From: Lytechinus pictus
Lineage: Eukaryota
Assembly: GCF_037042905.1 (NCBI RefSeq)
Contig: NC_087248.1
Location: 13,454,001-13,518,000, forward strand
Reading direction: 5' to 3'
Length of the DNA stretch: 64,000 nt
This document shows, one piece after another, positions 11,352 to 44,224 of the stretch. Position 1 is the first letter of the stretch, and every line of letters starts with the position of its first letter. Below the pieces are notes generated by a model that did not search any database, had not been told where the DNA came from, and saw only the letters and a program-made list of their open reading frames with translations. The translations under genes and the position numbers were made by a program.

Positions 11352-13421
11352 TTAGTAATTGACATAAAGCCCTTCATCATCAACTAATTCATCAGTTGGA
11401 TTTGCAATGTTGTTCTCATAGAGGTCTGTAAGACTCATACCACAATCCTTATCATGTTCCAGAATGTTGGGTTCTTCATTGAGTTTGCATCTGCGGGTTA
11501 GACCGAGATCTAGTCCTGGAGACCTGGGGTCATCATAGTCTGACTCTAAAACTCTAATTCTGTTCGTCTTTCTGCTCATATCCGGTTTTGAGTACAACAA
11601 ATCCATATCTGCGTCCGTTTGAGCGGCTTTCTTCAATCTCGCAGATGAAGAATTCCGTGGTATTTTGCCTGGTCTAACAGAAGCTGAAAATGATGCCTGT
11701 ACATGGGGTTGATCTTTTGGTGATGGACTTGGATGCTGGATTGATATCGCATGTGAATTCAATTGGTCTATATCGACATCCCCAGGAGCACCTTTGATAT
11801 CATCTACAGAACAATATACAGAATCCGGGCTATCAGGGTAAGCCTCAGAATCATACTTCGTGAACCCAATGGCACCCGAGAGATCCCCATCATTTGAAGT
11901 GGACTTTGAGGGTAGATGGCCAAAGCAGTGGCTCTCGGGTTCCCTCTGCTTGTGCACCAGCGCCTCATGATCTGTACGAAATGAACCGGACACCTTTACG
12001 TCCTGACTTTGCTGCAGATTTCCATGATCTTTTATAGCCTCAGAAGTGACAGCTCCTCGAATTATGGTGTTATGAGATCTATGTCGGGTCGATAACAAGT
12101 CTAAGTTCACCATACCACCAGATATGTCAGAATGTTGAGTGTTAACGAAAACCCCTGTTGAAGCCGTCGGTAGTGATTCGTGCACTGTTTTTCCAAGGCA
12201 GGGAAGATATTTTCTTAAAGCACGGTAAAAACAAGTGATAAAGCCAGTTACAATACAACATAATATCGAGAGGCCTAATGTAACCAAAACCCAAATAGGG
12301 ATTTTCCTTGCTTCGATGTCTCGATCGGAATTCTCGTCCACTACTTTGCTAACAGTTCTTTCTGTGGAAGTACTTCCGGTGTTTGATTCTACATCTTCAA
12401 GACTATTTCGGTTGGATACGTTTTTACATTTAGCATTCATGATTGCACAATTTGCGTTCCCTTCAGGTGTGTCAAATGTAGACAGTGAAACGTTGCACTC
12501 TTTTTCTTGGATAAAATTGCCAATGTTTCGTAAGAGAACTGTCTTATTTTTACTCGGCACACCTGGTCCACAAAATAAAGAAAGACGCCCTTCATGGACA
12601 AATGATACAGTGTTGTTCGGTGACAGTGGAATTAGAATACTTCCATTGGTGTACCAAAGAACATCAGCGTCAGTTTCTCCTTCCGGGCAACATTCAAAAA
12701 AAGAATGCAGACGGAGATCTTGGACGAAATGAAATGAGCAGGTATTATTGTTAGACTTGTCTTTATTATTAATGAGGCACACGCTTGGCATAACTCGACC
12801 ATTATGTACGTCTTCAATAGACGAGTAAACACTGAATATGTTGGTTGAGTTAAAATCTCCATCAATATTCATATCACTAGTCCCATACTCATATAGAACC
12901 TGATCCCCGACCAGCAGTTGAACTTGATCCCCGACGTTCACCTGCATCCATTCACAGGACATCTGCAATCTCCGGGTCTCTTGGTCGTAGAGTGTTGAGC
13001 AGACAGGTTCTGTGCTTTCGATGGTTATATTGAACGACGCAATGGTGCAAAGCTTTTGATCCTTGTGATGAATTTTAAGCACGTACTCTCCTGAATCGCT
13101 AGGTTCAGAAAAAGCGATCGACAAGTTGATCGTTCGTTCTCCTGCTACATTTGTCAACTTATAACGGTCCCTGTTGATAGTTTCTTTGTCGACATCATCG
13201 AGCAGTTGATTCTTCTCATCTACCCATTTTGCCCATACGATTGACTGATTCTCATTCAAGGGGTCCTCAAGAAGGAATTGTACAGAAACATTCCGTCCGT
13301 CTACGGCTCCTAATGAGCGTTCCTGCCTGGCACCACACAAAAATGATACATATTCGCACTGTCCAGCGTGGAAGATGCTTTCAAGAAGGACAATTACATA
13401 AATTATTGAAGTAATTGCCAT
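11352..13421 (-). CDS. Ig-superfamily type-I transmembrane receptor, paralog 1 (689 aa, intronless CDS)
   Basis: Signal peptide MAITSIIYVIVLLESIFHAGQC; V-like domain (QSIVW, RYKL, LSI...DSGEY); domain 2 PVC...MSCEW; TM IPIWVLVTLGLSILCCIVTGFITCFY; tail motifs SVYCSV, LYSKPDMSRKT, YDDPR, YENN, YVNY. Confidence 0.9.
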   Translation of the reverse strand: MAITSIIYVIVLLESIFHAGQCEYVSFLCGARQERSLGAVDGRNVSVQFLLEDPLNENQSIVWAKWVDEKNQLLDDVDKETINRDRYKLTNVAGERTINLSIAFSEPSDSGEYVLKIHHKDQKLCTIASFNITIESTEPVCSTLYDQETRRLQMSCEWMQVNVGDQVQLLVGDQVLYEYGTSDMNIDGDFNSTNIFSVYSSIEDVHNGRVMPSVCLINNKDKSNNNTCSFHFVQDLRLHSFFECCPEGETDADVLWYTNGSILIPLSPNNTVSFVHEGRLSLFCGPGVPSKNKTVLLRNIGNFIQEKECNVSLSTFDTPEGNANCAIMNAKCKNVSNRNSLEDVESNTGSTSTERTVSKVVDENSDRDIEARKIPIWVLVTLGLSILCCIVTGFITCFYRALRKYLPCLGKTVHESLPTASTGVFVNTQHSDISGGMVNLDLLSTRHRSHNTIIRGAVTSEAIKDHGNLQQSQDVKVSGSFRTDHEALVHKQREPESHCFGHLPSKSTSNDGDLSGAIGFTKYDSEAYPDSPDSVYCSVDDIKGAPGDVDIDQLNSHAISIQHPSPSPKDQPHVQASFSASVRPGKIPRNSSSARLKKAAQTDADMDLLYSKPDMSRKTNRIRVLESDYDDPRSPGLDLGLTRRCKLNEEPNILEHDKDCGMSLTDLYENNIANPTDELVDDEGLYVNY

Positions 13422-13861
13422 GTTGAATCGAAATGATTCCTCACATCAGGGTTCAATATTTTGCTTCTATGATCACATAAATCCTGATATGACTTCTTTC
13501 ATGAAAAACTTTAATTCCTGCACGAAGAAAAAAAAAACCTGGTTGATCGATGAAATAAACAGAATTGATATACAAGGAAATGATATGAAGTATCATATTG
13601 AACAGCAGAAAGGTTTAACAATGCAATAAATCTGTAACACGCAATGTCTTACAACTGAGTGGTTCGAATTGAAGATCGGTTGTAGTTATATCTCTCTTAT
13701 TACGAGAGAGAAATAAGAGATATCAATGATTTTATGATTGTTTGTATGCATGCATCAAAACTAGTCTCAGTTTCGTTAGTCCATAAATCAAATGAAGTGA
13801 CTTGATAATATGCGGAAAATTACATGGCATCACGAATCAATACCTTTTGTTTGTAGAATAT

Positions 13862-13874
13862 GAAAAGTGAAACC
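13862..13874 (+). promoter_or_regulatory. IRF-binding element (ISRE/IRF-E-like) upstream of paralog 1
   Basis: GAAAAGTGAAACC matches the IRF consensus, ~440 bp upstream of the ATG; short motif in AT-rich DNA. Confidence 0.25.
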
Positions 13875-14282
13875 AGTAATTAAAAATATGAAACAATTGC
13901 TAGTTAAGCACTTTGCATCAATATGTAAATGCTGTATATATAAATATATCATTTCCCTATTTCACTAGAGAAAATACTCTTGATCGCTTTAAAGCTTATA
14001 AAGGTGTATCGCTCCATTTTAGTTGTATTTAACAGTCTTTGTCATTTCATAAAATATAGCTGTACACGTACACATTTTGTGCTAGTTAATGAAACTTATC
14101 ATTTGTTCACAAAATATTTTAAAATGAAACCTCAAAACTTTGGGCTATCCACTACAGCCTTCAGAACAAAGGTTTAAATCTTCTCCCAACACATATACAA
14201 TTTTGTGATCCCATGCATGGTAGTTCTGTGTATATCAAGGTATTTCTGTTTGTAATTATTATTTGCCGTAAACCAGTTGACA

Positions 14283-14466
14283 NNNNNNNNNNNNNNNNNN
14301 NNNNNNNNNNNNNNNNNNNNNNNNNNNNNNNNNNNNNNNNNNNNNNNNNNNNNNNNNNNNNNNNNNNNNNNNNNNNNNNNNNNNNNNNNNNNNNNNNNNN
14401 NNNNNNNNNNNNNNNNNNNNNNNNNNNNNNNNNNNNNNNNNNNNNNNNNNNNNNNNNNNNNNNNNN
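14283..14466. other. Assembly gap (184 N)
   Basis: Run of N. Confidence 1.
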
Positions 14467-14726
14467 AGAGTTACAATTGATCCAATCAATTGTAACTCTA
14501 TGGAAATCCAAGAGTGTCATAATTTTTTCTACAGGAAATTTGCAAAATGGCCTTTGTAAATAAAGGAGATCACATCAAATCGTCAAGAAATCGATGAATT
14601 TATGGATATACATTCATATCTAGATTTTGTTTAGAAATAAACATGCATTTTATATGTTGACTTTGCTGGCTTTCCATAGTTGCGATTGATTAAATCAATT
14701 GCAACTCTTTGTAAGACGGGGCCCTG
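14467..14726. mobile_element. MITE fragment abutting the gap
   Basis: Inverted ends agagttacaattgat ... atcaattgcaactctttgtaagacggggccctg. Confidence 0.55.
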
Positions 14727-15149: not shown

Positions 15150-15280
15150 GGGTCCATTAACACAAAGATTTGCGATTAATCGTACGCTTGATATTCAAGA
15201 TAAACTGTGTATTGTTGTGAATGCTATCAATCGTGGAAAGTTTTCTACGATGATAGCTAGGCTTTGTGTTACGGGCCCCA
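15150..15280. mobile_element. Short MITE (related fragment at ~49443-49515)
   Basis: gggtccattaacacaaag ... ctttgtgttacgggccc inverted ends; similar sequence gggtcccgtaacataaaggttagcgattgatcgta at 49443. Confidence 0.5.
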
Positions 15281-15977: not shown

Positions 15978-17948
15978 TCAAGTACTTAGAGCTGTAATCG
16001 CATGCAGGCTATCACCCTCTTCAGCGAGAGGTGCTTCTTTAGTTTCGTTGGCTTTGATTCTTTGAAAGAATTCTTCTCCAGGAACCCTTGGGTCGTCATA
16101 TTCAAACTCCTCAGATATGTTTGTCTTAGTCTTCCGACTTATATCAGCCTTTGCGTAGAGTTTGTCTCCATCCAAAATTAAATCGAACGACGATGTTGCC
16201 TCCGGTTTCAGGTTCAATGGATTGGAGTGATGTACATTTTGTTCAGTAGCGTGAAGCAAGATTTGGTCAGATCCCAAATGTGAAACCTCGATTCCCGTAC
16301 CTATTATATCCTTCTGGACATCATCAACTGTACAGTATGTATTGTCCGGATTTGTCGCTCCTTCGGTTGTTGAAAGGACAGCTATTGCGTTGTTGTGAAC
16401 GGTCTTAACCTCACCGAAACTGTTATTGCGATTCAGTAGAATAATGTTTTCGTCACCGGCATTTACTCGTCGGATGCCGTGTTTCTGATTCAACGCTGTC
16501 AACGTGCGCCGCTCGGGAAGTTCCGGAGGATTGTTTTGTCGGTTAGGGGATATCCTTGTCAGGTTATTTTTGATGCAACTGTTTACTTGTCGCTGATTGC
16601 CAGACTGTGGTTGTTCAGGGACTCTGTCACTTCTCGGCCGTGACAATGGGATTGAAAGGTTCATGCCAACAGAATCAGTGCTTTCGTTCTGGACTGCCAC
16701 CGTATCAGTGATGTGAATATGATTGTTCTTCTCATTCCGTTTTATGATGAGGTTTCTGTGACATTTGCTGAAGCAGCCACAAATGGATAATATTAATGTC
16801 ACTGTTGATATCACCACAACTGAATATAGCAATATATCCCTTTTAGTTGCTGGTTGCTGGGTTGCAAGTGGATTTGTTGGGGCGTTCACACTACTCCCAT
16901 TCCAATTATTTACATCACATGAGCTAGGACCACAGTACTTCAATATATTGGTGCCGTTCTCATGACACAATTTTTTGCATTTTAGCTTTTCTCGATTCTT
17001 AGTATCTTTTATTATCACAAGATAATGGCCTTTCTTTTCCCAAATGATAACATCAATTTGCTCGATATCAATCACAGGTACGTTGTTTGAATTACTAGAT
17101 GCAAGCAGGTTACATTGCGTATCAAAATAACACAACGAAAATTCTGAGTTTCTGCATATGCTTCGTCCAATAGCATCAGTTACAGATTGATTCTTACTTA
17201 TCAAACATGTTTGAAACGTAGTAAATCCACATTTTTGAGTCCTCTTCTCCCTGCCACTTAGTACAGAACATCCGGTTGGCACGCCATTCTGGTCAAATAT
17301 ATTTTGAACAGGAATGTGTGCGGTTAGTTTATTTGATAAATTAAAATTACCACCGAAATTCATCTCACTGGTTTCATACTCATACAGCACCTGATTACCT
17401 GCTACAAGTTGAGCCTGATCCCCTTTTCTCACCTGTAACCACTGACAAGACATTAGGAATTTACCACTGCTTGTATTGAAGAGCGTAGAACATACAGGTG
17501 GTGTACTTTCTATTGTTAGGTTCAGCTTTGCAAGAATACAAAGCGACTGAGAATCATGTTGAATCCTGATCACATGTTGTCCAGAATCACTTTCTTCAGT
17601 GAACACGATACCTATTTCTAACTGGGTCTCGTTAATCTCATCCAACTTGTAACGATTGACATAAAGGGATGAGTTGGTATAGCATTGCAAAGAATTATTC
17701 AGTAGTTTTTCACATCGCTGCACCACTTCTCTTTTTATCCACACAAGAGACTGGGGGCTTTTGACGGGATCTTGCAGATTGAATTTGAGAGAAATATTCT
17801 GCCCTTCAACCATCTTCTTTGACACTTGCTGATTCTGGTTACACCATAATGAATCGTCATTAGAAAAGGATGGTTGGATGAAGAATTCCACAGAACAAAG
17901 TAGAAAAAATATTGCCCTATGTTGAACTCCGATAGTCCGTCGAGACAT
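15978..17948 (-). CDS. Ig-superfamily TM receptor, paralog 2 (656 aa, intronless CDS)
   Basis: Signal peptide; LWCN...GQNISLKF...QSLVW...RYKL...DSGQH...SLC; PVC...MSCQW; TM ILLYSVVVISTVTLILSICGCF; tail NTYCTV, LYAKADISRKT, YDDPR. Confidence 0.9.
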   Translation of the reverse strand: MSRRTIGVQHRAIFFLLCSVEFFIQPSFSNDDSLWCNQNQQVSKKMVEGQNISLKFNLQDPVKSPQSLVWIKREVVQRCEKLLNNSLQCYTNSSLYVNRYKLDEINETQLEIGIVFTEESDSGQHVIRIQHDSQSLCILAKLNLTIESTPPVCSTLFNTSSGKFLMSCQWLQVRKGDQAQLVAGNQVLYEYETSEMNFGGNFNLSNKLTAHIPVQNIFDQNGVPTGCSVLSGREKRTQKCGFTTFQTCLISKNQSVTDAIGRSICRNSEFSLCYFDTQCNLLASSNSNNVPVIDIEQIDVIIWEKKGHYLVIIKDTKNREKLKCKKLCHENGTNILKYCGPSSCDVNNWNGSSVNAPTNPLATQQPATKRDILLYSVVVISTVTLILSICGCFSKCHRNLIIKRNEKNNHIHITDTVAVQNESTDSVGMNLSIPLSRPRSDRVPEQPQSGNQRQVNSCIKNNLTRISPNRQNNPPELPERRTLTALNQKHGIRRVNAGDENIILLNRNNSFGEVKTVHNNAIAVLSTTEGATNPDNTYCTVDDVQKDIIGTGIEVSHLGSDQILLHATEQNVHHSNPLNLKPEATSSFDLILDGDKLYAKADISRKTKTNISEEFEYDDPRVPGEEFFQRIKANETKEAPLAEEGDSLHAITALST

Positions 17949-19070: not shown

Positions 19071-20774
19071 CTACACAGATGTGTTCATATACAAGTCACT
19101 CTCAGTTGTTGATTCATCTGTTGGATTCGTTATGTTGTTGCCATAGATATGGTTTTCTTGATCGATCCTCGGGGCACGTGGATGGAGGCCATCTTCTGGA
19201 AAAAGAAGAAAGTCATCTTCAGGAAACGCTCCTCTACTCGCACCTCTCTGCGCAGATGTCGATTTCTTTGTTTTCTGGCTCAAGTCAGGTTTCGCGTAGA
19301 GTGCATCTAAGTTATGCTTTAGTAAATTTGTAGCCATCATTTCATCTCTAGATGTGGTCTCCGATTCCGATGAGGAACGTGGGAGCCCAACAGTAGAAGA
19401 TCCCTGGTTGTTATCGGCTGTCATTGCTAGTGCCCCTGTCTGATCGTCACCCATTGATGTCGAATCCCTGTGAAGACCCTGTTCCATATCCCTTCTTAAA
19501 ACATACCTTTTACTGAGGTTTCTGGTTAAACAACATTTCATGATGAAAGCACTAGCAACACACCCAAGTGCTAATGTTGATATTGCAGCCACTGCTATCT
19601 TAATGAATTGTTTTGTTGAATTCGTTGTTGGTTTTAGCACGCCAGTATTATTAGTGGTAGTAGGACTATATATACCGGTGGTAGGTTCTGCCAAATTGTT
19701 TCCAATATCGCTCGAAATCGAATTAGCATTTGAAAAATTCACCAGTAAAACTTTACATTGTTGGTCTGCTTTAAATTGGAAGAAAAGTTGCTGAAAGTTC
19801 AATTTGGAAGTTGAACATTCATTTTTAGCGTATTTTCTTATGTCAAAAAATGTCATATTAATAATGTTTGAATGCTGCTCTTCATTCAAAACACAGAAGG
19901 AAATCACACCATTTACAATTGTTGAATTGTAGTTTTCTGAAAAAGGAACAAGTGATTCATTGTTATAAACAAGCATAGTAGATCTGCTCTCTTCATTGGC
20001 GCAACATTTTAAGTTTTCACTAACATCAAGTCCGTTATACTTAGCTGTGACAAGGGGGAGGAATTTACATTCTTCTTTCCCCTTTCCATTTGTGTGTGAA
20101 ACAATGCATTTCTCTGGTAGGGGGATTTCATGAAGAATATCATCAAGGCCAATGTATGTACTAAAACGATGTGTTATATTGAAGGAGCCCTTGAAATTCG
20201 ATTCTTCAATCTGATGTTCAAAGATCATTTCATTGTCTACCTCAAAGTGTGCTCGATCCCCTTTGTTCATTTGCACCCATTGGCAAGACATCTGTAATCT
20301 TTTGTTTTCTTCGTCGAATTGTGTGACACATTTCGGACGTGGGATTTCGACTGTTATATTAAGCAGAAGAGCCGTGCAGAGTGACTGTGTACCGTGGTTA
20401 ACAGTTACTACATGGTGCCCTGAATCATTACTCTCAATGTATAGAAGAAACAAATCAAAAGTGTCGTTTGCAACTTCGACCAATCGGTAACGACTTACGT
20501 CAAGATCCCCGTCGTCTTGATCTAAAGACTTATTCCGTTGTTTAATCAACATTGATTCACCTTTTCTCCACACCAATGACTGAGTCCCGACTAATGGATC
20601 TTTCAAATAAAATTTCCTAGAGAAGTTTTGTCCACTCCAAACGTCCAAATCTTCATTCTGAGTTTTGCCACACCAAAATGGATCGTCATCAGAGACACTG
20701 GCGTGAAAAGTGGTCTGCATGACAATTAATGTCAAAAGCATTCTGCACGCTAAAAAGTATTTCGTTGGAAACAT
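19071..20774 (-). CDS. Ig-superfamily TM receptor, paralog 3 (ORF opens at 20822; likely start MFPTKY at 20774)
   Basis: MFPT start aligns with paralog 5; FWCG...GQNFS...QSLVW...RYRL...DSGHH...SLC; PKC...MSCQW; TM IAVAAISTLALGCVASAFIM; short tail with LYAKPDLSQKT, IYGNN, LYMNT. Confidence 0.88.
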   Translation of the reverse strand: MFPTKYFLACRMLLTLIVMQTTFHASVSDDDPFWCGKTQNEDLDVWSGQNFSRKFYLKDPLVGTQSLVWRKGESMLIKQRNKSLDQDDGDLDVSRYRLVEVANDTFDLFLLYIESNDSGHHVVTVNHGTQSLCTALLLNITVEIPRPKCVTQFDEENKRLQMSCQWVQMNKGDRAHFEVDNEMIFEHQIEESNFKGSFNITHRFSTYIGLDDILHEIPLPEKCIVSHTNGKGKEECKFLPLVTAKYNGLDVSENLKCCANEESRSTMLVYNNESLVPFSENYNSTIVNGVISFCVLNEEQHSNIINMTFFDIRKYAKNECSTSKLNFQQLFFQFKADQQCKVLLVNFSNANSISSDIGNNLAEPTTGIYSPTTTNNTGVLKPTTNSTKQFIKIAVAAISTLALGCVASAFIMKCCLTRNLSKRYVLRRDMEQGLHRDSTSMGDDQTGALAMTADNNQGSSTVGLPRSSSESETTSRDEMMATNLLKHNLDALYAKPDLSQKTKKSTSAQRGASRGAFPEDDFLLFPEDGLHPRAPRIDQENHIYGNNITNPTDESTTESDLYMNTSV

Positions 20775-23700
20775 GTTTGTAAAATATATGAACAATCCAG
20801 AATTCACTTGTAATGTGTACATCTAAGTAGAGCGCCAATACATAATAGCCGCATGAACAAGGGTAACCTTTCACGTGCAGCAAATAACAATAACACTATA
20901 TGGATTGTCGTTCTGTAGAAGGTAAGCCTTTGAGCAGACATTGGAGAAGCGCTAGACTTTGTTACCAAATACAAATGATATGTGGAGCACATCAGAGGAA
21001 ATCAGATTAAGATATGAACCTATAGAATGGGGAAGTATATGGGCGGAGCGTGGACCGATAGAGACGACCTACCTCTCCACCTTTCATCATTGGTTGAATG
21101 TTGAAATATATTTATCAATGCATATCAAAATAGATAACCTAATGTAAATTGGAAGCAATCAATTTTCTCAGGATTGATGATAAATATGCATCTCTCTAAT
21201 TTGATTTATCATCATAAACCAGTTATCATAATGATCTGATTGTGAAACCGAAGGTCATTATTTTCCGGTGTCATAATTTATTAAGCAGAGGCCATTTCCC
21301 ACGGTACTGACGTCTACAAAAATAAAGTGTTACATGAAATAATTAATATTATGTTAGAGGATTCGTTATAAGGTTGTTCCTTTCTTGTGATCACTCTGAT
21401 ACTTAAGCAAAATGTATACTTTGCTGCTGTTTTTTCAGGAATTTGACATGTTATGTAATCTATGGATTTTCGTGAGGAAATGAATTAAGATTGGAATTTG
21501 ACTTGAATAAAAATTGAATTGCAGTGTTCGTGAATATTTTCTGATTCTGGTTTGAAGAATTGATGTTAATATTGCATATGCTGTTAAAGATGACCGAATA
21601 TACCACCACACAGTCACATACTTTGTTCAACGATTTATCAATATACCCTTCCCAGCTGGTCATCATTTGTGAGAAAGCAGTCGGGCAACTCCATAAAAAT
21701 GTAATCTAACCACCTGGAAGTGGTCATTTCCAGAGATATTATTAGTTTGCATCTGTGTTATAGTTCGTGCGAAGAAACCACTGATTGCTCACGCGAATAA
21801 CCCTCTATCAATCGAAGTTTATATTTCTCCTCCTCATATAACAAGGAGAGAGGGAATTTTAATTATTTGTAAAAGAAAAAACACAAGGATTGCTTGTAGT
21901 AAAAAGGGATATAAAATGCAGCATCTGAAATGCACACGCATATTCCTTTTTCAACATATACACACACCCGTTCTCCCACTCTCTCTTCCTCACACACGCA
22001 TCCACTCGCAATCACCCTAACACCGTATACACCACACAAGCATACCGCCCTAACTTATAATTGCTTCGGGTATTATTCAAAATAAACCAAACTACCATTC
22101 GATGTTTTTTTAGATTTTGGAGCCGTAAATCATAAGGTTTTATAGTTGAAAGTTATATATTCATACTTCAATTCAATCTTTTCATGATACTTAATGCTTT
22201 TCTGTTATTAAGAGGTCACTCTTGTCCAAACAATGACAAACTGCACTACTAACAAAATAGGAAAAAGCACATGCAAAGAAATGAGACATGCTAGTAACGA
22301 CTAATTTTTTTTCCACAGATATTTCTTCTTTATCAATGTATAATAGTACGGAATATTTATAAGGCGCTTGATACGGGCTTTTCTAAGTGAACTGCTCTCT
22401 GCTATATTATAACTGGTCCCTTAATAAATTTGGTCTACTAATAAATTACATGTAAGTCCACCTAAATTTACCAATTCTCAAGTGGGTCATCATCTGTTGA
22501 AATGACAAGTTTTGAGCAGGGACTTAAATCGACCCACAAGCTTTATGTTTATAAACGCGTAAATCATTCCACAAAGAAGGATTAATTACATTGTTTATCC
22601 ATCTTATTTATTTAATACATTTTGAATTTGCATATTGATACGTTTTCAACTGCACATTGTAATGTTATGACTAAAAATGACATGTTTTGAGATGTCAATT
22701 AGCAATGCGGGGGTTCAAAGATGGTTTCGAACTATTCCATATATTATTCAAACACAAATTTAAACGCATTGCAGGCATCATTATAAATATACATTTAACG
22801 AATTTTAAATCGGTGATTCAATTGTATACAGTGATAGTTATTATTGAATGAATTTTTATTCAATAACTTATTGATTACCTTTTCCGTGATACAAATAGCA
22901 CGGGTTATTCATATTATGCAATTTCTTAAAGGAGTATTTCACACAAGGGCATGGCAATGTTTAATACGTTGCAGTAAAGTATTATAGAGTAATAAAACAT
23001 GTATGCGAATATAATGGTAAACATGAATATGCACACTAAGCTAGTTATGCAGTGAAAACGTATACAACAAATTTCCATGCACTAAGGGTACTAGTCTTGA
23101 GAAGAAAACCTTATTTATTATTTATCAAGAAAAAGTTATCAGGTTCGATACCCATTTCATGATACACACAAGTAATCATTTAAACATATATTTATTTATT
23201 TTTGATATTTGTACAGGGTGGCACACATCACCAACTTGGTGGTCTTCATTGTGGCCCTGTTAACAAAAAAATAAACAAATAATGTCACTAATGATAATAA
23301 TAGGCAAGTAATGAACCAAATACAATACAATAATAAACAATATGTACAGGCACAAAATGTATGCAAACATGTCATAAGAAAAAAATATTGGTATCCCTAG
23401 CAATTATGATCATTGGATAATCATTCAACTTTGACCCTTTGAATTGAATTTGTGAATTTTGAAGGTAGAACATACAAATACCATAATTAGAACGGAAAAT
23501 AAATCAAACATCAAGAGTGAGAAAATGATTACAAATCAACACATATATATTTAAACGCGTTTGTGCTTACAACTTTGCATCCTATTTAAGCTATTGTATA
23601 TCTCTTTAAAAACTAAAACAAATAAGCTTCGCCTCGGCCTTATAAAAGTTTTGCTTGCTCATGCAATCTTCCCAAATTATGCTTCCAGTAAGAAATTCGG

Positions 23701-23972: not shown

Positions 23973-26180
23973 TCAAAGAAAAGAAGAAGAATTCATGTAC
24001 AGATCAGCATCAAATGTAGGTTGGTTTATACGGTTGTCTCTATCACTGTCATCCGTGTGGCTCGTGAAGTCTTCGGTCGGTACCGATGCGTAGAGATGAT
24101 CATCAGATTGCGAAAGACTGTCTTGTGGACCGTCTCTAGTCATGGTAGTTGCATCAGTTGGAGTAATATCATGAACATGATGATCTACATGGTCGCAATA
24201 TTGTCTACTCTGTGGTACAGATTGAGACTCTTTCCCCGTGTTTCTAGTTTTCTTGGACATGTCTGGGTGAGCATACATGGCTTCCAACTCTCGTGCAGAT
24301 GGTTTCTGGTTTCCAACAGCTTTTTCAATGGGGGTTGGTGTTTTGTCAGGCGAAGGTAAGGGGTTGTCTTTGTCAACATCAAGACGATCCCCTTCGTTAT
24401 CTTCAGGTGATTGAAGTGGTCTCAGAATAGGCGAATCCTTTTGAGGTTGGTTTGTTCTCCCGATGATCCTGGTAGTGTTATCATATATTGAAGAATAAGC
24501 ACCGTCCAACTCTGGTATCATCGATACTAGATGGTCAGTAGAGTGCTTTGCAACATTGTCCCTTTTGCATGGGTCCCCTGCCCCCTTACCATCACCAGTG
24601 GTGTGAATGACTGAAACATTATTGGTAGACATGCATTTTCCTGGATATGACTCTTTCATGTCATTGGGGATAAGACGAATTTGAGAGTTTTCGAGATTTT
24701 GTAGCTTAGTCTTCATTCTATCTGGTTCTCGGATGTTTATGTCTAATGTCGATTGCTGATGAGAGACCGACTCATCGGTATCAATGTCCACGTCTTCTTG
24801 AGGTTGCTGCGATGAAAAGGTGATCGTGTCATGAGGTCTTGAATCATCAACGTCATCGTCTTCCCCTGAAGCTAAATACGCGAGTGTACACGTAGCATTT
24901 GACCTTTGTTCTCTTACCAGATATTTACCTTTCCGTTGAAAGTAATAGAAACATAACATGACAACAATAATTGTAATACTTAGGATATATCCAGGTGTTG
25001 CAATGGCTGCCAGTGGTATCAGCCTATCGGTCCCTACGTTCTTAGGATTTGTCGACTCTATCGGAGGGCTACCTTCACTGGTTGCGGGGATATGAATTTC
25101 TTTACTTGGCCGATCCGTTGTTGATTGTAAATCCATATTTGTTACATTCACGATAATGGTTTCACATCTTAGTTCACTTCTCGCATCGAGTGGATATTTG
25201 CTTTCGCTTGCAGATTTACCTGAGATAAAAAAGCGATCACGTTCAAACTTTGAGAAGTCTAAAATAATAATGTTATGGATAATTGGTTTCGCGGAATCAT
25301 TGCTTCCAAGACATACGAATGCAATATTGTTGCTGACATTGTGGAGTGATAACATAACGTAGCTAGCATTTTTCCACCATATCAATGGAGTACTTTCATT
25401 CTCAACGCAGCAATCAAGTCTAACCTGTCCCCCTCTGTTGTTCTCTACCATACTGCGCTGTGGAGTGACAAATGCGCACGTTTCTCCTATGTCGCCTATA
25501 GCATTGGCAACAACACAAACATAGTCATCGTTAACCATATCTTCAATACTGATATAAACACTGAATCCATTAGTGAGGTTGGGATTGTTATCCAGGTTTT
25601 CACCTGTAGATCTATCTTCAGCCAACAGTCGATTACCGGCTCGTAATTCTGCGTGGTGGTTACTGCTAATCTGTGTCCACTGACAGGACAGTTCAACCTT
25701 CGCTCTATGTTGGTCCAACAAAGAGGTACAATTGTTTTTGGTATCAATAACTGACAAGGTGAATATCAAGGCTGTACATTTTGTCATGCCTTCTTCATTT
25801 AGAATAATGATGTGTTGTCCAGAATCCTCTTGATGTGCAGATGCAATCAGGAGCTCCAAGGTACAGTTTGAGAATGACTTATTCAGCCTATAACGTGAAT
25901 TAACAGAGGACTCATTACTTGTACACTGCAGAGTGTTATTACAGGTCATACTCCATGATGCATGTGGTGCTATCCAATTCAGGGTTTGATTTTCAAGGAT
26001 AGGGCATTGAAGATTGAATGAAATAAAAACGTCTTGATGATTCAATACTTCGACCGATTCAAACTTGTATTTACAGTTTTCGCCAGTGTTTTCACTTAAT
26101 GAATAGATTCGAACAAAGGTATCTAGAATGATCAAAAGTAACAATTTATTTACTCTTGGAAAACGTTGTCTACCCTCCAT
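23973..26180 (-). CDS. Ig-superfamily TM receptor, paralog 4 (735 aa, most divergent)
   Basis: Signal peptide; QTLNW, RYRL, LLI...DSGQH, KC; LSCQW; DCC...IWW; TM LAAIATPGYILSITIIVVMLCFYYF; tail AYSSIYDN, MYAHPDMSKKT, LYASV, LYMNS. Confidence 0.88.
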   Translation of the reverse strand: MEGRQRFPRVNKLLLLIILDTFVRIYSLSENTGENCKYKFESVEVLNHQDVFISFNLQCPILENQTLNWIAPHASWSMTCNNTLQCTSNESSVNSRYRLNKSFSNCTLELLIASAHQEDSGQHIIILNEEGMTKCTALIFTLSVIDTKNNCTSLLDQHRAKVELSCQWTQISSNHHAELRAGNRLLAEDRSTGENLDNNPNLTNGFSVYISIEDMVNDDYVCVVANAIGDIGETCAFVTPQRSMVENNRGGQVRLDCCVENESTPLIWWKNASYVMLSLHNVSNNIAFVCLGSNDSAKPIIHNIIILDFSKFERDRFFISGKSASESKYPLDARSELRCETIIVNVTNMDLQSTTDRPSKEIHIPATSEGSPPIESTNPKNVGTDRLIPLAAIATPGYILSITIIVVMLCFYYFQRKGKYLVREQRSNATCTLAYLASGEDDDVDDSRPHDTITFSSQQPQEDVDIDTDESVSHQQSTLDINIREPDRMKTKLQNLENSQIRLIPNDMKESYPGKCMSTNNVSVIHTTGDGKGAGDPCKRDNVAKHSTDHLVSMIPELDGAYSSIYDNTTRIIGRTNQPQKDSPILRPLQSPEDNEGDRLDVDKDNPLPSPDKTPTPIEKAVGNQKPSARELEAMYAHPDMSKKTRNTGKESQSVPQSRQYCDHVDHHVHDITPTDATTMTRDGPQDSLSQSDDHLYASVPTEDFTSHTDDSDRDNRINQPTFDADLYMNSSSFL

Positions 26181-29314: not shown

Positions 29315-29778
29315 CTAATGTCCATCTTTTTGAGCTTGGACTTGCTTCCAGAATATTCTCTTGGGGCCTCTTGGGTCATCATATACTGTTTCTGCAAAGG
29401 ACTTTATTTTCCTGGTCTTACGACTCATATCCAGTTTGGCGTAAAACGGCCAGAGAAAACAGAATTGTTGTCTTTGACATGAAGTCCTGGTTATTGTTTC
29501 ACGAGAGGACTTGTCCGATGTTTTATCTGACAAGTACCATGAGTACTGTTTTATCTGACAGTTACTAGGTAACAGTGACTCTCAGCCAATCATTATCAAA
29601 GAAAGTTGTCAGACCTAACAAATTGTCAGACGAAAATATTGATGAAACGCTTCCGTGGTGATGTCTTCGGGCGATGTCTTCGTCGCATCTGCCGGCATGC
29701 TGACGGACGACGGACAAGTCTCTGCCACTGCATACTAAAAAGCGGTTTGCGCTCTTGAAAAGGTGTTGGAACGACATT
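29315..29778 (-). pseudogene. Decayed distal tail of paralog 5
   Basis: Aligns to 42140-42450 with indels and an insertion; encodes YAKLDMSRKT and YDDPR beyond the stop. Confidence 0.85.
29491..29655. mobile_element. ~165 bp MITE inserted in the former coding tail of paralog 5
   Basis: Absent at the homologous site in paralog 6 (gaagtcctggtgatg); TGG duplicated at 29488-29490 and 29656-29658; degenerate gtttca...tgaaac ends with internal ctgaca/tgtcag repeats. Confidence 0.8.
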
Positions 29779-31524
29779 TTATACCTTTTTAGCATTTATT
29801 ATCTTTGGAGATCTAGCACAGCCCTCGACTTCATCTATAGAACAATACGTATCGTCAGCGCCAGTTGTGCTTGCATTGGCGGCATCCATATGCTCATCGT
29901 TAAAATCAACTTTTCTATTACCCTGGGCAGAACATACGGTCTTGTGCTGATACTTTCCTGGAGTAGAACTTTGATGTTCGACATTGAAGGGTGTCCTGTA
30001 CATGAAACCCGGTCTCGCTTCAGGGGATACAATGGCGTTTGCTTGACTTTCTCCACAAGAGCGCAATGTTTCTTGTTTTGGATAAAGCTCTAGCCTGGGA
30101 GATGTTTGGAGACGGGAAGCATCACTACTTAAAAGAGACGCTCCAGAAAATGCACTCATTTCTACAGAATCTCTATCTGTATCGGTTATATGAATTGGTG
30201 ATTGCATTCTAAGAACCTGATACCCCTCCCGTCGTCGATCAGATTGCTTTCCAGTTCGGATTCTGCAAACCAATTTGGCGATGTTGATGGACAAGCTCAA
30301 CACAAGACCCAGAGCTGCAATCACAACGACAGAAATCAAAATAGGTTGTTTATCGCCAGTGTTGTACCTTTGAACATATTTTTTTCCACTCGACCCATTA
30401 CCAGTACTGGAAGTCACATGAATATTTTCTTCAAAAATCGTTTTTGGAGGAAGAGAAGCTACTATGGTAGTAAGTGACGATGGTCTATATGTTAAAACAT
30501 TAACATATACCAGGCCAATGGAACATTGAGAGTCTTCATGAGAAAGGTGGAAAGTACTTGAGTTTCCATCTCTTAGACCGTCAAAGTTCAGACGTCCGAT
30601 GCTTTTAATTACTAGCCCAGTTGAGTTCTTCGTCTCTTCCACAAAAAAGAGAAATGGAAAACTAACGTTCGTCGTTTCGCGACAATCGATCCTTTGCAGT
30701 GATTTTCCATTAATAGTGTACAGTGATGAATTTGAAGCGTTCTTGCTTTCCGAGCAGCATTCAGTGTTTGAGCCATGAGTTAATTTAAACTGAATTAATT
30801 TATCCGTTGCCGTGGGAAACTGACATTCTTTGTATCGCTTTAAGTTATCATAAAAAACTACACACCTGGTTGGCACTACAGTTGAGTCACCAACTTTTTC
30901 TGGAAAAAGGAATATGTTGTATCCGTTGGTGATGCTATATGAACCTTCTGATTTTATCCCTGTAGTTGTATGTTCATACATCACCTGATCGCCCGCTAAG
31001 AGTCTTACTTGATTCCTAACGTTCACTTGCATCCAGTGGCAAGACATCTGTATCGCGTTATTTTCATTTCTGTAGAATATTTCACAAATAGGTTTGTTTA
31101 TGTCGACGCTCAAGTTCAATCGGGATATCTCACACAAAGTTCGTCCCTTTTCGCATAGGCGAAGAGAGTGCGTCCCTGTGTCACTTATTTCAGTAAACAT
31201 AATCGACAACTTTAATTCAGTTTGTTTGTTTAAAGCAAGACTATAGCGTCCAGATTTAACCGAAAAGTTATTTGCAGCTGATCGATTAAATTCATTTTCG
31301 TATCCAGAATCTGGATTACACCACACAACATATTGTCTCGGTTGTAAGTTGTTTGAGTAAAAATGAAAGAGTGTAGTGATGTTTTGACCATCGGTTTTAA
31401 TCATTGAAAGTTCCTGTGGTTCGCTGCACCAGAGCATTGACACCGCGTGTATTTGGAAGATGAGAACGCTGAAGAGTATCACATCGGATGTAAGCCGTGT
31501 AGGAAACATCTTGCCGTCGTACAT
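29779..31524 (-). CDS. Ig-superfamily TM receptor, paralog 5; ectodomain and TM intact, cytoplasmic tail truncated (possible pseudogene)
   Basis: Close paralog of 42140..44224; TCA(Ser)->TAA at 29779-29781; the remaining tail (FYAKLDMSRKTRK...VYDDPR) lies downstream at 29315-29450. Confidence 0.85.
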   Translation of the reverse strand: MYDGKMFPTRLTSDVILFSVLIFQIHAVSMLWCSEPQELSMIKTDGQNITTLFHFYSNNLQPRQYVVWCNPDSGYENEFNRSAANNFSVKSGRYSLALNKQTELKLSIMFTEISDTGTHSLRLCEKGRTLCEISRLNLSVDINKPICEIFYRNENNAIQMSCHWMQVNVRNQVRLLAGDQVMYEHTTTGIKSEGSYSITNGYNIFLFPEKVGDSTVVPTRCVVFYDNLKRYKECQFPTATDKLIQFKLTHGSNTECCSESKNASNSSLYTINGKSLQRIDCRETTNVSFPFLFFVEETKNSTGLVIKSIGRLNFDGLRDGNSSTFHLSHEDSQCSIGLVYVNVLTYRPSSLTTIVASLPPKTIFEENIHVTSSTGNGSSGKKYVQRYNTGDKQPILISVVVIAALGLVLSLSINIAKLVCRIRTGKQSDRRREGYQVLRMQSPIHITDTDRDSVEMSAFSGASLLSSDASRLQTSPRLELYPKQETLRSCGESQANAIVSPEARPGFMYRTPFNVEHQSSTPGKYQHKTVCSAQGNRKVDFNDEHMDAANASTTGADDTYCSIDEVEGCARSPKIINAKKV

Positions 31525-31848: not shown

Positions 31849-31851
<3 letters not shown>

Positions 31852-31902
31852 AAAAGATGACTGATGAAGTCCTTTCGTTCTTATAAAGTACTTGAAAATA
31901 AT

Positions 31903-42139: not shown

Positions 42140-44224
42140 CTATTGTCCATATTTTTGCGCACGGACTTGCTTCCAGAAGTCTTCTCCTGGGTCCCTTGGG
42201 TCATCATATACTGCTTCTGCAGAGGACTTTATTTTCCTGGTCTTTCGACTCATATCCGGTTTGGCGTATATGGCCGTCATCTCTGCAGAAGGAATAGGAA
42301 GGTTGTCTTTGACATGAAGTCCTGGTGATGTCTTTGGTGCATGTGATGGCATCTCTCTCATGGCGCAAGTCTTGGACATCGCAATCGCATACGAAGAAAA
42401 TAGACTGTGCTCTTGCAAAGGTGTTGTCTCTGACTCTTTGAACGACAATGATGCCTTTTTAGCATTTACTGTCTTTGGAGATCTAGCACAGCCCTCGACT
42501 TCATCTAAAGAATAATACGTATCACCAGCGCCAGTTGTGCTTGCAATGACGGCATCCATATGCTCATTGTTAAGATCAACGTTTCTATCACCCTGGGTAG
42601 AACATGCCATCTTCTGCTGACACTTTCCTGCAGTAGCACGTTGATGTTCGACATTGAAGGGTGTCGTGTACACAGAGCCCTGTCTCACTTCAGGGGATAC
42701 CAAGATGTTCGCTTGACTTTCTCCACATGAGCGCATTGTTCTCTGTTCTGGATCAGCCTCCAGCCTGGACAATGTTTGGAGACAGGAAGCATCATTACTT
42801 AACGGAGTGGCTCCAGTAGATGGTCTCATTTCTACAGAATCTCTATCTATATCAGTAACATGAGTAGCTGATTGCATTCTCAAAGTCTGATTCCTCCCAC
42901 TTCGTTGATCACATTGCTTTCTACTTTGGTTTCTACAGACTAATGTGACAATGTTGATAGACAGGCTGAACACAAAAGCCAAAGCTACAATCATAACGAC
43001 CGAAATGAAGATAGTTTTATCAATGTCAGTGTTATTCTCATTCCCACTCGACCCATTATCACTTCCGATGGAGTTGAATATAGTTTGATCAATGCCAGTG
43101 TTATTCTCATTTCCACTCCACACATTTTCTTTAGAGATCGTTTTTGGATTAGGAGAAGCTATGATAGTAGAACAAGGCGATGGTCTGTTCAAAATACTCT
43201 CGACATATAACGGGCCAATTGGGCATTGAAAGTCTTCATGAGAAAGGTGGAAAGTACTTGAGTTTCCATCTCTTAGACCGTCAAAGTCCAGATACCCGAT
43301 GCCTTTAATTACTTGCACAGTTGACTTCTTTGTCTCTTCCACAAAGAAGAAAAATGGAAAACTAACGTTCGTCGTTTCGCGACAATCGATCCTTTGCAGT
43401 GATTTGCCGTCAATAGTGTACCATGATGAATTGGAAGCGTTCTTGCTTTCCGAGCAGCATTCAGTGTTTGGGCCATGAGTTAAGTTAATCTGAATCAATT
43501 TATCCGCTGATGTTGGAAACTGGCATTCTTTGTTTCGTTTTAAGTTATCATCAAAAACTACACACCTTGTTGGCATTACAGTTGAGTCAACAACTTTTTC
43601 TGGAGAAAGAAATATGCTGTATTCGTTGGTGATGTTATAAAGACCTTCTGATTTCATCTCTGTAGTTGTATGTTCATAAATCACCTGTGTGCCCGCTAGA
43701 AGTCTTACTTGATCTCTAACGTTCACTTGCATCCACCGGCAAGACATATGTATCGTGTTATTTTCATTTCTGTAGAATGTTTCACAAATAGGTTTGTTTA
43801 TTTCGACGCTCAAGTTCAATCGGAATATGTCACACAAAGTTCGTCCATTTTCGTATATACTCAGAGAGTGCGGTCCTGTGTCATTTTGTTCAGTAAACAT
43901 AATCGACAACTTTAATGTTTGGTTGTTTAAAGCCAGATTATAGCGTTCAGATTTGAACGAAAAGTTTTTCGCGGCTGAAAAATTAAATTCATTTTCGTAT
44001 CCGGACTCTGGATTACACCACATAACATGTTGTTCCGGTTGTAAGATGCTTGAATCAAAATAAAAGAGTGTAGTGATGTTTTGACCATCGGCTTTGATCA
44101 TTGAACGTTCCTGTGGTTCGCTGCACCAAAGAATTGGTAGTACCGCATGTATTTGGAAGATGAGAACACTGAGGAGCATCACATCGGATGTAAGCCGTGT
44201 AGGACACATCTTGCCGTCGTACAT
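42140..44224 (-). CDS. Ig-superfamily TM receptor, paralog 6 (694 aa, intronless CDS)
   Basis: Signal peptide; LWCS...GQNIT...QHVMW...RYNL...DTGPH...TLC; PIC...MSCRW; TM IFISVVMIVALAFVFSLSINIVTLVC; tail DTYYSL, IYAKPDMSRKT, VYDDPR. Confidence 0.92.
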   Translation of the reverse strand: MYDGKMCPTRLTSDVMLLSVLIFQIHAVLPILWCSEPQERSMIKADGQNITTLFYFDSSILQPEQHVMWCNPESGYENEFNFSAAKNFSFKSERYNLALNNQTLKLSIMFTEQNDTGPHSLSIYENGRTLCDIFRLNLSVEINKPICETFYRNENNTIHMSCRWMQVNVRDQVRLLAGTQVIYEHTTTEMKSEGLYNITNEYSIFLSPEKVVDSTVMPTRCVVFDDNLKRNKECQFPTSADKLIQINLTHGPNTECCSESKNASNSSWYTIDGKSLQRIDCRETTNVSFPFFFFVEETKKSTVQVIKGIGYLDFDGLRDGNSSTFHLSHEDFQCPIGPLYVESILNRPSPCSTIIASPNPKTISKENVWSGNENNTGIDQTIFNSIGSDNGSSGNENNTDIDKTIFISVVMIVALAFVFSLSINIVTLVCRNQSRKQCDQRSGRNQTLRMQSATHVTDIDRDSVEMRPSTGATPLSNDASCLQTLSRLEADPEQRTMRSCGESQANILVSPEVRQGSVYTTPFNVEHQRATAGKCQQKMACSTQGDRNVDLNNEHMDAVIASTTGAGDTYYSLDEVEGCARSPKTVNAKKASLSFKESETTPLQEHSLFSSYAIAMSKTCAMREMPSHAPKTSPGLHVKDNLPIPSAEMTAIYAKPDMSRKTRKIKSSAEAVYDDPRDPGEDFWKQVRAQKYGQ

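What the first reader, a model, noticed from the sequence alone, without database searches (positions are those of the whole stretch)
11352..44224. Tandem array of six divergent, single-coding-exon Ig-superfamily receptors with tyrosine-motif tails: candidate invertebrate immune or allorecognition receptor family
Seen: six co-oriented minus-strand ORFs of 581-735 aa share one architecture (SP, V-like Ig, 4-Cys Ig-like, CC domain, S/T stalk, TM, Tyr-motif tail). No introns interrupt the CDS, the ectodomains are heavily diverged, and only anchor residues and short tail motifs are conserved. Established: clustered, fast-evolving Ig receptors with ITIM-like tails (LILR/KIR, CD300, SIRP, fish NITR, Hydractinia Alr) mediate immune or self/non-self recognition, but usually have about one exon per domain. 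Intronless multigene expansion is typical of sea urchin TLRs. Inference: a birth-and-death recognition receptor family in a probable echinoderm. I do not recognise it as a named family and cannot confirm novelty without searches.
Basis: partly seen in the sequence, partly recalled or inferred. Interest (0 to 1): 0.92.

Follow-up and report, generated by a model that had tools for sequence, protein, structure and literature searches.

The report
Sea urchin three-Ig receptor gene cluster
Six neighbouring intact genes, part of a row of at least twelve in a sea-urchin genome, encode membrane proteins with three antibody-like (Ig) domains outside the cell and a long tail with conserved tyrosine docking motifs inside. 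The family matches no named family, its only taxon-labelled relatives are echinoderm, and the proposed immune role is plausible but untested.

Summary
Six co-oriented minus-strand ORFs (581-735 aa) sit exactly where stated. The assembly gap (14283-14466) is intergenic and touches no coding sequence.

- **Structure:** A confident AlphaFold model (pLDDT 83) shows three tandem Ig-like domains. D1 is V-type and closest to TREM2, PD-1 and CD300. D2 has four cysteines.
- **Family size:** The array continues outside the window, with at least 12 intact tandem genes on this chromosome. There are also two more genes 0.4 Mb away, two pseudogenes, and a distant sister cluster on another chromosome.
- **Relatives:** A search of 1.8 billion proteins found 138 unnamed relatives. 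None of the ten checked has a Pfam match, and I found no paper on the family.
- **Tails:** They carry conserved motifs (YCSVDD, LYAKPDMSRKT, YDDPR, C-terminal LYxN). These fit SH2-adaptor docking (YxxP, YxN) better than ITIM, which is strict in one gene only. There is no ITAM.
- **Evolution:** Most paralog lineages have partners among the unnamed foreign sequences (40-64% identity), so they look older than those sequences' split from this genome. Pairwise dN/dS is 0.2-0.95.
- **ORF5:** Its distal tail is lost to frameshifts.
- **Expression:** Three RNA-seq runs gave no reads, so expression and any immune role remain untested.

The parts
11352..13421 (-). Gene W1 (689 aa), the most complete member. 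Signal peptide res 1-22 (13356-13421); D1 V-type Ig res 27-137 (13011-13343); D2 four-Cys Ig res 138-236 (12714-13010); D3 Ig-like res 237-335 (12417-12713); Ser/Thr stalk res 336-377 (12291-12416); TM res 378-400 (12222-12290); tail res 401-689 (11355-12221).
   Evidence: ORF; TM, tail and sequons; AF2 model with pLDDT 83 and three beta-sandwich domains; Ig matches.
11799..11816 (-). W1 tail motif 1, SVYCSVDD (Y536). This is the only strict ITIM match among the 11 long-tailed own-genome genes. The family consensus is [VI]YC[ST][VIL]D[DE].
11565..11594 (-). W1 tail motif 2, LYSKPDMSRKT (Y610), a YxxP type. It is the most widely conserved tail motif of the superfamily (LYAKP).
11523..11537 (-). 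W1 tail motif 3, YDDPR (Y629), a YxxP type.
11355..11402 (-). W1 C-terminal module NPTDE...LYVNY (YxN type, Y686). It is also present in W3 and W4 and in L007, L010, L012 and L014p outside the window.
15978..17948 (-). Gene W2 (656 aa). Same architecture; the tail has YCTVDD, LYAKADISRKT and YDDPR but no C-terminal LYxN. Closest paralog is L009, outside the window (40%).
19071..20822 (-). Gene W3 (583 aa). Shorter tail (156 aa) with LYAKPDLSQKT, YGN and LYMN.
23973..26180 (-). Gene W4 (735 aa), the most divergent member in the window. The tail has MYAHPDMSKKT and LYMN. It pairs with the foreign sequence P0007 in the tree; P0007/P0141 are 41-42% identical to it.
29779..31524 (-). Gene W5 (581 aa). 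The ectodomain, TM and proximal tail are intact, but the ORF ends early because of a 1-nt indel relative to W6. It is either a tail-truncated variant or a decaying copy.
   Evidence: W5/W6 tail dN/dS 1.23
29321..29778 (-). Frameshifted remnant of the W5 distal tail. It still holds a recognisable MSRKT...YDDPR stretch in another frame.
42140..44224 (-). Gene W6 (694 aa), a recent duplicate of W5 (72% aa, about 82-86% nt). The tail has YYSLDE, IYAKPDMSRKT and YDDPR. The duplicated segment extends into both flanks.
14283..14466 (.). Assembly gap. It is intergenic between W1 and W2, with repeat-like DNA on its W2 side. It is not part of any CDS and was not filled.

Best explanation
The window holds six members of a previously unnamed family of type I membrane glycoproteins. 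The only taxon-labelled relatives are echinoderm.

Shown:
- Each gene encodes the whole protein in one exon.
- The protein has a signal peptide and a V-type Ig domain that lacks the canonical B-F disulfide but keeps the core Trp, the Arg-Asp pair and the DxGxY motif.
- A four-cysteine Ig domain and a third Ig-like domain follow.
- Then come a glycosylated Ser/Thr stalk, one TM helix and a long tail of low sequence conservation.

Inferred: the ectodomains bind diverse ligands at the cell surface, because paralogs share only 18-30% identity. Engagement or clustering would lead to phosphorylation of three or four conserved tail tyrosines ([VI]YCSVDD, LYAKPDMSRKT, YDDPR, C-terminal LYxN). These would then dock SH2-domain proteins. 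By the known SH2 specificities, YxN fits Grb2-type adaptors, YxxP (YDDP/YDHP, YAKP) fits Crk/Nck/Abl-type adaptors, and YxxV fits a SHP/Csk/Src-type partner.

The family grew by tandem and segmental duplication with occasional decay. It includes conserved short-tailed members beside long-tailed ones. A role in immune or other cell-cell or non-self recognition is the most likely use but is not demonstrated.
For: - Intact 581-752 aa ORFs in a 36-40% GC genome.
- AF2 model with pLDDT 83 and pTM 0.77.
- Foldseek hits at probability 1.0 to three-Ig ectodomains: titin Ig81-83, CEA, Necl-4, MAG Ig1-3, nectin-1 D1-D3, pIgR.
- D1 matches TREM2 (Z 11.8, rmsd 2.1 A over 98 residues), PD-1, TREM-1, 2B4, NKp44 and CD300.
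- Invariant W63, R86-Y87, D109, G111 and a conserved cysteine set.
- TM, tail and sequon statistics and the motif catalogue.
- LYAKP and YCSVDD-like motifs recur in distant relatives. Two of three C5-cluster genes checked carry [LV]YAKPKK and one has IYYTVDE.
- Pairwise dN/dS below 1 in every intact domain comparison.
- Seven lineages pair with full support with sequences from outside this genome.
- The short-tailed L008 is conserved to the same stop codon in P0004, at 64% identity.
- At least 24 SH2-domain matches in the same genome.
- Duplicates and pseudogenes are present.
Against: - No transcription evidence: zero reads on ORF1 and its flanks in three raw RNA-seq runs of the same species label (tissue unknown). 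The one run with matching contigs may be DNA.
- No Pfam Ig model reaches its cut-off.
- Tyrosine phosphorylation and SH2 binding are inferred from motif classes only.
- The ligand, cell type and immune link are all unknown.
- No domain shows dN/dS above 1.
Confidence: 0.7

Rival explanations
1. These are cell-adhesion or tissue-recognition molecules of the nectin/Necl/IgLON/MAG kind. They would act in epithelia, the nervous system or development and have no immune role. The tails would link adhesion to the actin cytoskeleton through Crk/Nck/Grb2, as nephrin or Dscam tails do.
For: The best whole-ectodomain structural matches are adhesion molecules: Necl-4, nectin-1, IgLON5/NEGR1, MAG, DIP/Dpr, CADM3 and VCAM-1. 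YxxP and YxN motifs are typical of adhesion-receptor signalling (established SH2 specificities). Paralog lineages are old and retained in sequences from outside this genome.
Against: Partner sequences are only 40-64% identical and paralogs 18-30%. Tandem multiplication with pseudogenes, long-tail/short-tail pairs with near-identical ectodomains, and mostly nonsynonymous variants in another sample (11 of 15) are all more usual for recognition or immune families than for adhesion molecules with fixed partners.
Confidence: 0.22
2. The genes are silent relics: intronless duplicates that are no longer used, or are used only as a reservoir.
For: Zero RNA-seq reads in three runs. Intronless tandem copies. 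One copy has a decayed tail and two are pseudogenes.
Against: Twelve or more 1.3-2.3 kb ORFs stay open. dN/dS is 0.2-0.6 in most domains. Tail motifs are conserved across deeply diverged paralogs. Intact partner sequences exist outside this genome, including one with the same stop position. The tissue of the RNA runs is unknown.
Confidence: 0.05
3. The family derives from, or was exchanged with, a large DNA virus. The idea rests on herpesvirus gC/gE-like Ig glycoproteins, which would also explain the lack of introns.
For: The language-model feature search put herpesvirus glycoprotein C (Marek_A) clusters first at 0.90-0.92 and glycoprotein E among the hits. The genes have no introns in the coding sequence.
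Against: Scores of 0.9 occur for 4-10% of shuffled proteins according to the tool's own note. There is no Pfam Marek_A or Herpes_gE hit at E<=1. The neighbours are host-type LINE fragments. The family has two chromosomal clusters and partner sequences outside this genome.
Confidence: 0.02

Closest known systems
Nectin / nectin-like (CADM/Necl) and MAG/Siglec-type V-C2-C2 ectodomains
   Same: Three tandem Ig domains with an N-terminal V-type domain in a type I membrane protein. These are the top Foldseek matches over all three domains.
   Different: There is no detectable sequence homology (10-15% identity and sub-threshold Pfam scores). D1 lacks the canonical disulfide. The tails are 150-325 aa with tyrosine motifs, not short FERM/PDZ-binding tails. 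The Siglec sialic-acid Arg on strand F is not conserved (alignment). The coding sequence is a single exon.
Single-V immune receptors TREM, CD300, NKp44, PD-1, pIgR domains
   Same: D1 superposes best on these V-type domains: Z 10-11.8 and rmsd 2.1-3.0 A over about 100 residues.
   Different: Those are one-domain (or pIgR repeat) receptors, with the canonical B-F disulfide and multi-exon genes. Here D1 has an N-terminal-segment/G-strand cysteine pair and is followed by two more Ig domains.
Paired-receptor clusters of vertebrates (LILR/KIR, SIRP, CD300, Siglec, fish NITR)
   Same: A tandem cluster of diverged IgSF receptors, with long-tailed and short-tailed members that have similar ectodomains. 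L014p and L014m are 83% identical over the ectodomain. Short-tailed L008 is conserved in a sequence from outside this genome.
   Different: The ITIM is not a family trait and there is no ITAM. No charged TM residue was seen in the short-tailed forms. The gene structure is intronless and there is no sequence homology. An immune role has not been shown.
Hydractinia Alr family (PMC9546547)
   Same: An invertebrate cluster of IgSF receptors whose V-type and other Ig domains lack diagnostic sequence motifs and were recognised through structure prediction. Tails are very divergent and some members have short tails.
   Different: In Alr genes each domain has its own exon, according to the paper. Many Alr tails carry ITAMs or ITIMs. 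Alr genes are linked genetically to allorecognition. Sequence relatedness could not be tested here. Sea urchins are solitary animals without colony fusion.
Sea urchin Toll-like receptor multigene arrays
   Same: Intronless coding sequence and tandem multiplication in the same kind of genome. This rests on my own knowledge of the S. purpuratus immune-gene literature and was not checked here.
   Different: The fold is entirely different (LRR-TIR versus Ig with a tyrosine-motif tail). TLR subfamilies are far more numerous, and their members more alike within a subfamily.

Membership tests
Immunoglobulin superfamily (V-type domain, D1) | Two-sheet Greek-key beta sandwich that superposes on solved V-type domains | tested here: met
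   AF2 pLDDT is about 90 over D1. Matches: TREM2 Z 11.8 with rmsd 2.1 A over 98 of 112 residues, plus PD-1, TREM-1, 2B4, NKp44 and CD300. The C'-C'' region is poorly modelled, so V-type versus I-type is not fully settled.
Immunoglobulin superfamily (V-type domain, D1) | Core sequence signposts: Trp on strand C, Arg (strand D) with Asp (E-F turn), and DxGxY before strand F | tested here: met
   W63, R86, Y87, D109 and G111 are invariant in 15 sequences.
Immunoglobulin superfamily (V-type domain, D1) | Canonical B-strand/F-strand disulfide | tested here: not met
   There is no Cys in the modelled B or F strands of D1. The conserved cysteines are C29 (before strand A) and C125 (strand G). This pair is typical but not obligatory for IgSF membership.
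Immunoglobulin superfamily (Pfam Ig clan models) | Score above the Pfam gathering cut-off for an Ig family | tested here: not met
   The best score is I-set at 15-17 bits against a cut-off of 23.7, and four of six proteins have no hit. Among the ten distant relatives the only Ig-type hit is V-set at 17.8 bits against a cut-off of 26, in P0013.
ITIM-bearing inhibitory receptors (LILRB/KIR-L/SIRPa/CD300a/Siglec type) | Cytoplasmic [S/I/V/L]xYxx[I/V/L], conserved in the family | tested here: not met
   A strict ITIM occurs only in W1 (SVYCSV) and an ITSM only in L007. The -2 position of the conserved YCSV motif is N, D, R, T or S in the others.
ITAM-bearing activating receptors | Yxx[L/I]x6-12Yxx[L/I] in the tail, or a charged TM residue for an ITAM adaptor | tested here: not met
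   There is no ITAM in any of the 13 own-genome members. The TM segments of short-tailed L008 and L014m have no Lys or Arg.
Siglecs | Conserved sialic-acid-binding Arg on strand F of the V-set domain | tested here: not met
   The modelled F strand (W1 residues 111-119) has no conserved Arg. The aligned positions vary (K, R, T, I, S) among paralogs.
Nectin / CADM | V-C2-C2 ectodomain plus a short tail ending in a PDZ-binding (and FERM-binding) motif | tested here: not met
   The ectodomain layout is met. The tails are 150-325 aa, have different C-termini and share no C-terminal motif beyond LYxN.
Hydractinia Alr | Sequence homology to Alr1/Alr2, one exon per domain, location in the ARC | not testable with these tools
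   No Alr sequences were available to compare. The exon structure differs, by comparing the paper with the single ORFs here.

The most novel reading that the evidence does not exclude
The two clusters (chromosome C4 at 13.43-13.50 Mb plus 13.89 Mb, and C5 at 15.20-15.38 Mb) form an echinoderm counterpart of a leukocyte-receptor complex. In this reading it is a polymorphic set of paired long-tail and short-tail three-Ig receptors, expressed on coelomocytes and used for immune or self/non-self recognition. It would signal through a tail module of its own (YCSVDD / LYAKPD / YDDP / LYxN) that evolved independently of ITIM/ITAM signalling.
Probability: 0.25. Interest if true: 0.8.

Novelty: new variant of a known kind. 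Interest (0 to 1): 0.55.

Why it matters
Sea urchins are the reference invertebrate deuterostomes for comparative immunology. Their known receptor expansions are TLR, NLR and SRCR families, and I found no paper describing a clustered IgSF receptor family with tyrosine-based tails in them.

This family is invisible to Pfam, and none of the relatives whose database records I checked carries a descriptive name. It has a confident three-Ig fold with non-canonical cysteines. It also carries tail motifs conserved across very deep paralogs, which gives concrete testable docking sites.

The species named by earlier scan notes, Lytechinus pictus, is to my knowledge genetically tractable, so knock-outs and expression mapping should be feasible. 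If the immune or recognition role holds, the family adds an independent example of a paired-receptor complex outside vertebrates. If it does not, it is still a sizeable undescribed lineage-specific family of surface receptors.

Tried and rejected
1. **Splice joint upstream of ORF1.** Loose ends of contigs at 13483 coincide with an AG on the minus strand, and I first read them as a 5'UTR intron. On re-reading, one contig carries the extra letters and then runs on into 13484 and beyond. That fits a roughly 10-nt insertion allele, not splicing. The supposed upstream exon end is not found in the window. I withdrew the claim, so that run may be DNA.
2. **RNA evidence.** Three raw RNA-seq runs gave 0 reads. 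The second run search found no holder on record as RNA.
3. **Names for relatives.** Cluster look-up of ten relatives gave only unnamed ENA entries and one UniParc id. A profile search of the 90% clusters returned four hits with no names.
4. **Herpesvirus glycoprotein similarity** from the feature search. It has no HMM support and was rejected.
5. **Relation to the pseudokinase Ig receptors** noted elsewhere in this genome. There is no kinase or other Pfam domain in ten long relatives.
6. **Positive selection.** Nei-Gojobori dN/dS by domain for four paralog pairs is never above 1, except in the decaying W5 tail. Deeper pairs are saturated at synonymous sites.
7. **Extra family fragments in the window.** None apart from the W5 tail remnant.
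8. **Epith-2 paper.** A literature hit that proved unrelated.
9. **Disulfide pairing.** Both C141 and C215 are missing in the two L014 genes, which hints that these two pair with each other.

Full report
**Observation**

- 11352-13421, 689 aa
- 15978-17948, 656 aa
- 19071-20822, 583 aa
- 23973-26180, 735 aa
- 29779-31524, 581 aa
- 42140-44224, 694 aa

I call them W1 to W6. They align end to end with invariant Trp, Arg-Tyr, Asp-x-Gly and cysteine columns. Pairwise identity is only 18-29%, except W5/W6 at 72%.

Each protein has:
- a hydrophobic N-terminus;
- 9-16 N-glycosylation sequons and 10-17 ectodomain cysteines;
- one strong TM segment (Kyte-Doolittle mean 1.7-2.9);
- a cytoplasmic tail of 156-325 residues.

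ORFs of about 2 kb in DNA of 36-40% GC do not arise by chance.

**The assembly gap**

The gap at 14283-14466 lies between the W1 start codon (13421) and the W2 stop (15978), with repeat-like DNA on its W2 side. tblastn with all family members finds nothing beside it. No coding sequence depends on it. It could hide a promoter or non-coding first exon of W1. I did not try to fill it.

**Fold**

Pfam gives only sub-threshold Ig hits: I-set at 15-17 bits against a cut-off of 23.7. A first AlphaFold model from eight sequences was mediocre (pLDDT 63). It already matched only multi-Ig ectodomains.

With a 73-sequence alignment of relatives (A4), the model of W1 residues 22-345 reached pLDDT 83 and pTM 0.77. 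It shows three beta-sandwich domains.
- Foldseek against the PDB aligns all three domains to three-Ig structures: titin Ig81-83, CEA, Necl-4, MAG Ig1-3, nectin-1 D1-D3 and pIgR. E is about 1e-8 and probability 1.0.
- Swiss-Prot models give basigin, VCAM-1, pIgR, Siglecs and CADM3.
- The Foldseek-independent search places D1 on V-type domains. The best is TREM2 at Z 11.8, rmsd 2.1 A over 98 residues. PD-1, TREM-1, 2B4, NKp44 and CD300 follow.

D1 keeps the Ig core signposts W63, R86, D109 and G111. It has no cysteine in strands B or F. Its conserved cysteines are C29 (before strand A) and C125 (strand G). D2 has C141, C156, C215 and C228 on strands A, B, F and G. D3 has C245, C284 and C332.

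**Extent of the family**

The window is C4:13454001-13518000 of an 812 Mb assembly. A profile of the ectodomain finds 15 places in this genome:
- the six genes in the window;
- six more just upstream on the same strand (13429347-13453561);
- two at 13.89 Mb;
- one on C10 with two stop codons.

Translating these loci gives five further intact tandem genes: L007 (696 aa), L008 (448 aa), L009 (674 aa), L010 (681 aa) and L012 (752 aa). There is also one broken copy (L013) and an inverted pair at 13.89 Mb (L014p, 699 aa; L014m, 417 aa).

The broader profile A4 adds a second cluster of distant relatives on C5 at 15.20-15.38 Mb. Three members that I fetched from it have one long open frame each.

**Relatives elsewhere**

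A full HMMER pass over 1.84 billion cluster representatives gives 138 relatives at E<=1e-3 and 90 at E<=1e-10. None of the ten I looked up carries a descriptive name. Ten long ones have no Pfam hit above cut-off.

The nearest Atlas cluster without a family name has 93 members, all with a known phylum being Echinodermata. Earlier notes of this scan call the genome Lytechinus pictus. I did not verify this. Five literature searches found no description of the family.

**Tails**

Four motifs are conserved among the long-tailed members:
1. [VI]YC[ST][VIL]D[DE]
2. LY[AS]KPD[ML]S[RQ]KT
3. YDDPR (YDHP in L010)
4. a C-terminal NPTDE...LY[VIM]N

The strict ITIM consensus is met only by W1 (SVYCSV) and the ITSM only by L007. 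ITAMs are absent.

Motifs 2 and 3 are YxxP and motif 4 is YxN. By the classical SH2 specificity classes (my knowledge, not tested here), YxxP fits Crk/Nck/Abl-type domains and YxN fits Grb2-type domains. The genome encodes many SH2 domains, with at least 24 matches.

LYAKP-like and YCSVDD-like motifs recur in distant relatives. Two of the three C5-cluster genes carry [LV]YAKPKK and one has IYYTVDE. These two motifs therefore look like a signature of the wider family. Other distant members carry other tyrosine repeats, for example about a dozen IYQTL-type repeats in P0030.

**Evolution**

A maximum-likelihood tree of 73 ectodomains splits into two fully supported clades. The 13 own-genome genes fall in one clade together with 13 foreign sequences. 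Seven lineages pair own and foreign genes with 100% support:
- W4 with P0007
- W3 with P0005
- L010 with P0008/P0020
- L008 with P0004
- W2+L009 with P0006/P0012
- W1+L007 with P0002/P0003/P0011
- L014p+L014m with P0013

Identity within these pairs is 40-64%. The source species of the foreign sequences is unknown. If they come from other species, most paralog lineages predate the split and only some duplications are lineage-specific: W1/L007, W2/L009, W5/W6 and L014p/m.

Nei-Gojobori dN/dS by domain in four paralog pairs is 0.19-0.95, so constraint is moderate to weak but selection is purifying. The exception is the W5/W6 tail at 1.23.

That exception fits the state of W5. Relative to W6, all indels are in frame through the ectodomain. 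From about 29780 onward there are many frameshifting indels, and a remnant of the MSRKT...YDDPR stretch survives in another frame at about 29383. The W5/W6 duplication unit includes flanking DNA and is rearranged.

**Long-tail and short-tail forms**

L008 has a 15-residue tail. A foreign relative (P0004) is 64% identical over the whole length and stops at the same position, with a conserved YDV.

L014m shares 83% identity with its inverted neighbour L014p over residues 1-346. It then diverges, ends 17 residues after the TM, and has no tail remnant downstream. This resembles vertebrate paired receptors, although no charged TM residue is present.

**Expression and polymorphism**

The single read-laying run gave zero reads on 9500-14280 from three raw RNA-seq runs of the same species label, with about a quarter of each run read and tissue unknown.

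A fourth run of unknown type gave short contigs at 95-99% identity over parts of the ORF and its flanks. I first took loose ends at 13483 for a splice acceptor. They are better explained by a roughly 10-nt insertion allele, because one contig continues into the supposed intron. Transcription is therefore untested.

Of the 15 differences in those contigs inside W1, 11 are nonsynonymous and six fall in codons 247-275 of D3. This hints at high amino-acid polymorphism, but it comes from one sample of uncertain nature.

**Interpretation**

What is shown:
- an undescribed Pfam-invisible family, echinoderm by its only taxon-labelled relatives;
- single-coding-exon genes for three-Ig type I membrane proteins;
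- conserved tyrosine-motif tails;
- tandem clusters with duplicates, decaying copies and conserved short-tailed members.

What is inferred: surface recognition coupled to phosphotyrosine/SH2 signalling. An immune or non-self recognition role is a reasonable guess. I put it at roughly one in three to one in four for a dedicated immune role. An adhesion or tissue-recognition role is the main rival.

The label 'ITIM-like' should be dropped as a family trait. 'Birth-and-death' applies only in a slow form.

Noticed in passing
G000:C4:13429347-13453561 (loci L007-L010, L012, L013), just upstream of the window: The tandem array continues on the same strand outside the window. There are five more intact genes (448-752 aa) and one broken copy, so the cluster has at least 12 intact genes over about 70 kb.
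   Followed up: yes
L014:3141-4394 (-) and L014:6358-8457 (+) = G000:C4:13.89 Mb: A head-to-head pair whose ectodomains are 83% identical over 346 residues. One has a 307-aa tyrosine-motif tail and the other stops 17 residues after the TM with no tail remnant. The layout resembles paired receptors.
   Followed up: partly
L008:1183-2529 (-) and protein P0004: A short-tailed member (15-aa tail with YDV) is conserved at 64% identity, to the same stop codon, in a sequence from outside this genome. The short form is therefore an old, maintained gene and not a recent truncation.
   Followed up: yes
G000:C5:15199014-15385598 (loci L016-L018): A second cluster of at least nine distant relatives on another chromosome. 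Three fetched members have one long open frame each (702-739 aa). Two of these three carry an [LV]YAKPKK tail motif.
   Followed up: partly
window 37584-38733 and 38733-39883: A head-to-tail duplication of 1151 bp at 99.8% identity in the 10.6 kb spacer between W5 and W6. It is either a very recent duplication or an assembly artefact. ORFs there have no Pfam hit.
   Followed up: no
window 1220-3252 and 6399-8777 (-): Two non-LTR retrotransposon fragments with reverse-transcriptase ORFs (RVT_1, E 5e-28 for 6399-7661) lie just below the gene array.
   Followed up: partly
window 13483: Contigs of run X1 carry about 10 extra letters here, 62 nt upstream of the W1 start codon. It looks like an insertion/deletion allele and it mimics a splice acceptor.
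   Followed up: partly
window 12597-12683 (W1 codons 247-275, start of D3): Seven differences between the reference and contigs of another sample fall within 30 codons, and six change the amino acid. This may be a polymorphism hotspot.
   Followed up: partly
Protein P0030 (foreign relative, 833 aa): Its tail holds about a dozen tandem repeats of an IYQTL/IYHTI-type motif, several of which fit the ITIM consensus. Tail signalling modules therefore differ widely across the wider family.
   Followed up: no
window 13175-13268: One low-depth contig of X1 skips 92 nt inside the W1 coding sequence with non-canonical ends (GA..CT). It is probably a deletion allele or an assembly artefact, not an intron.
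   Followed up: no
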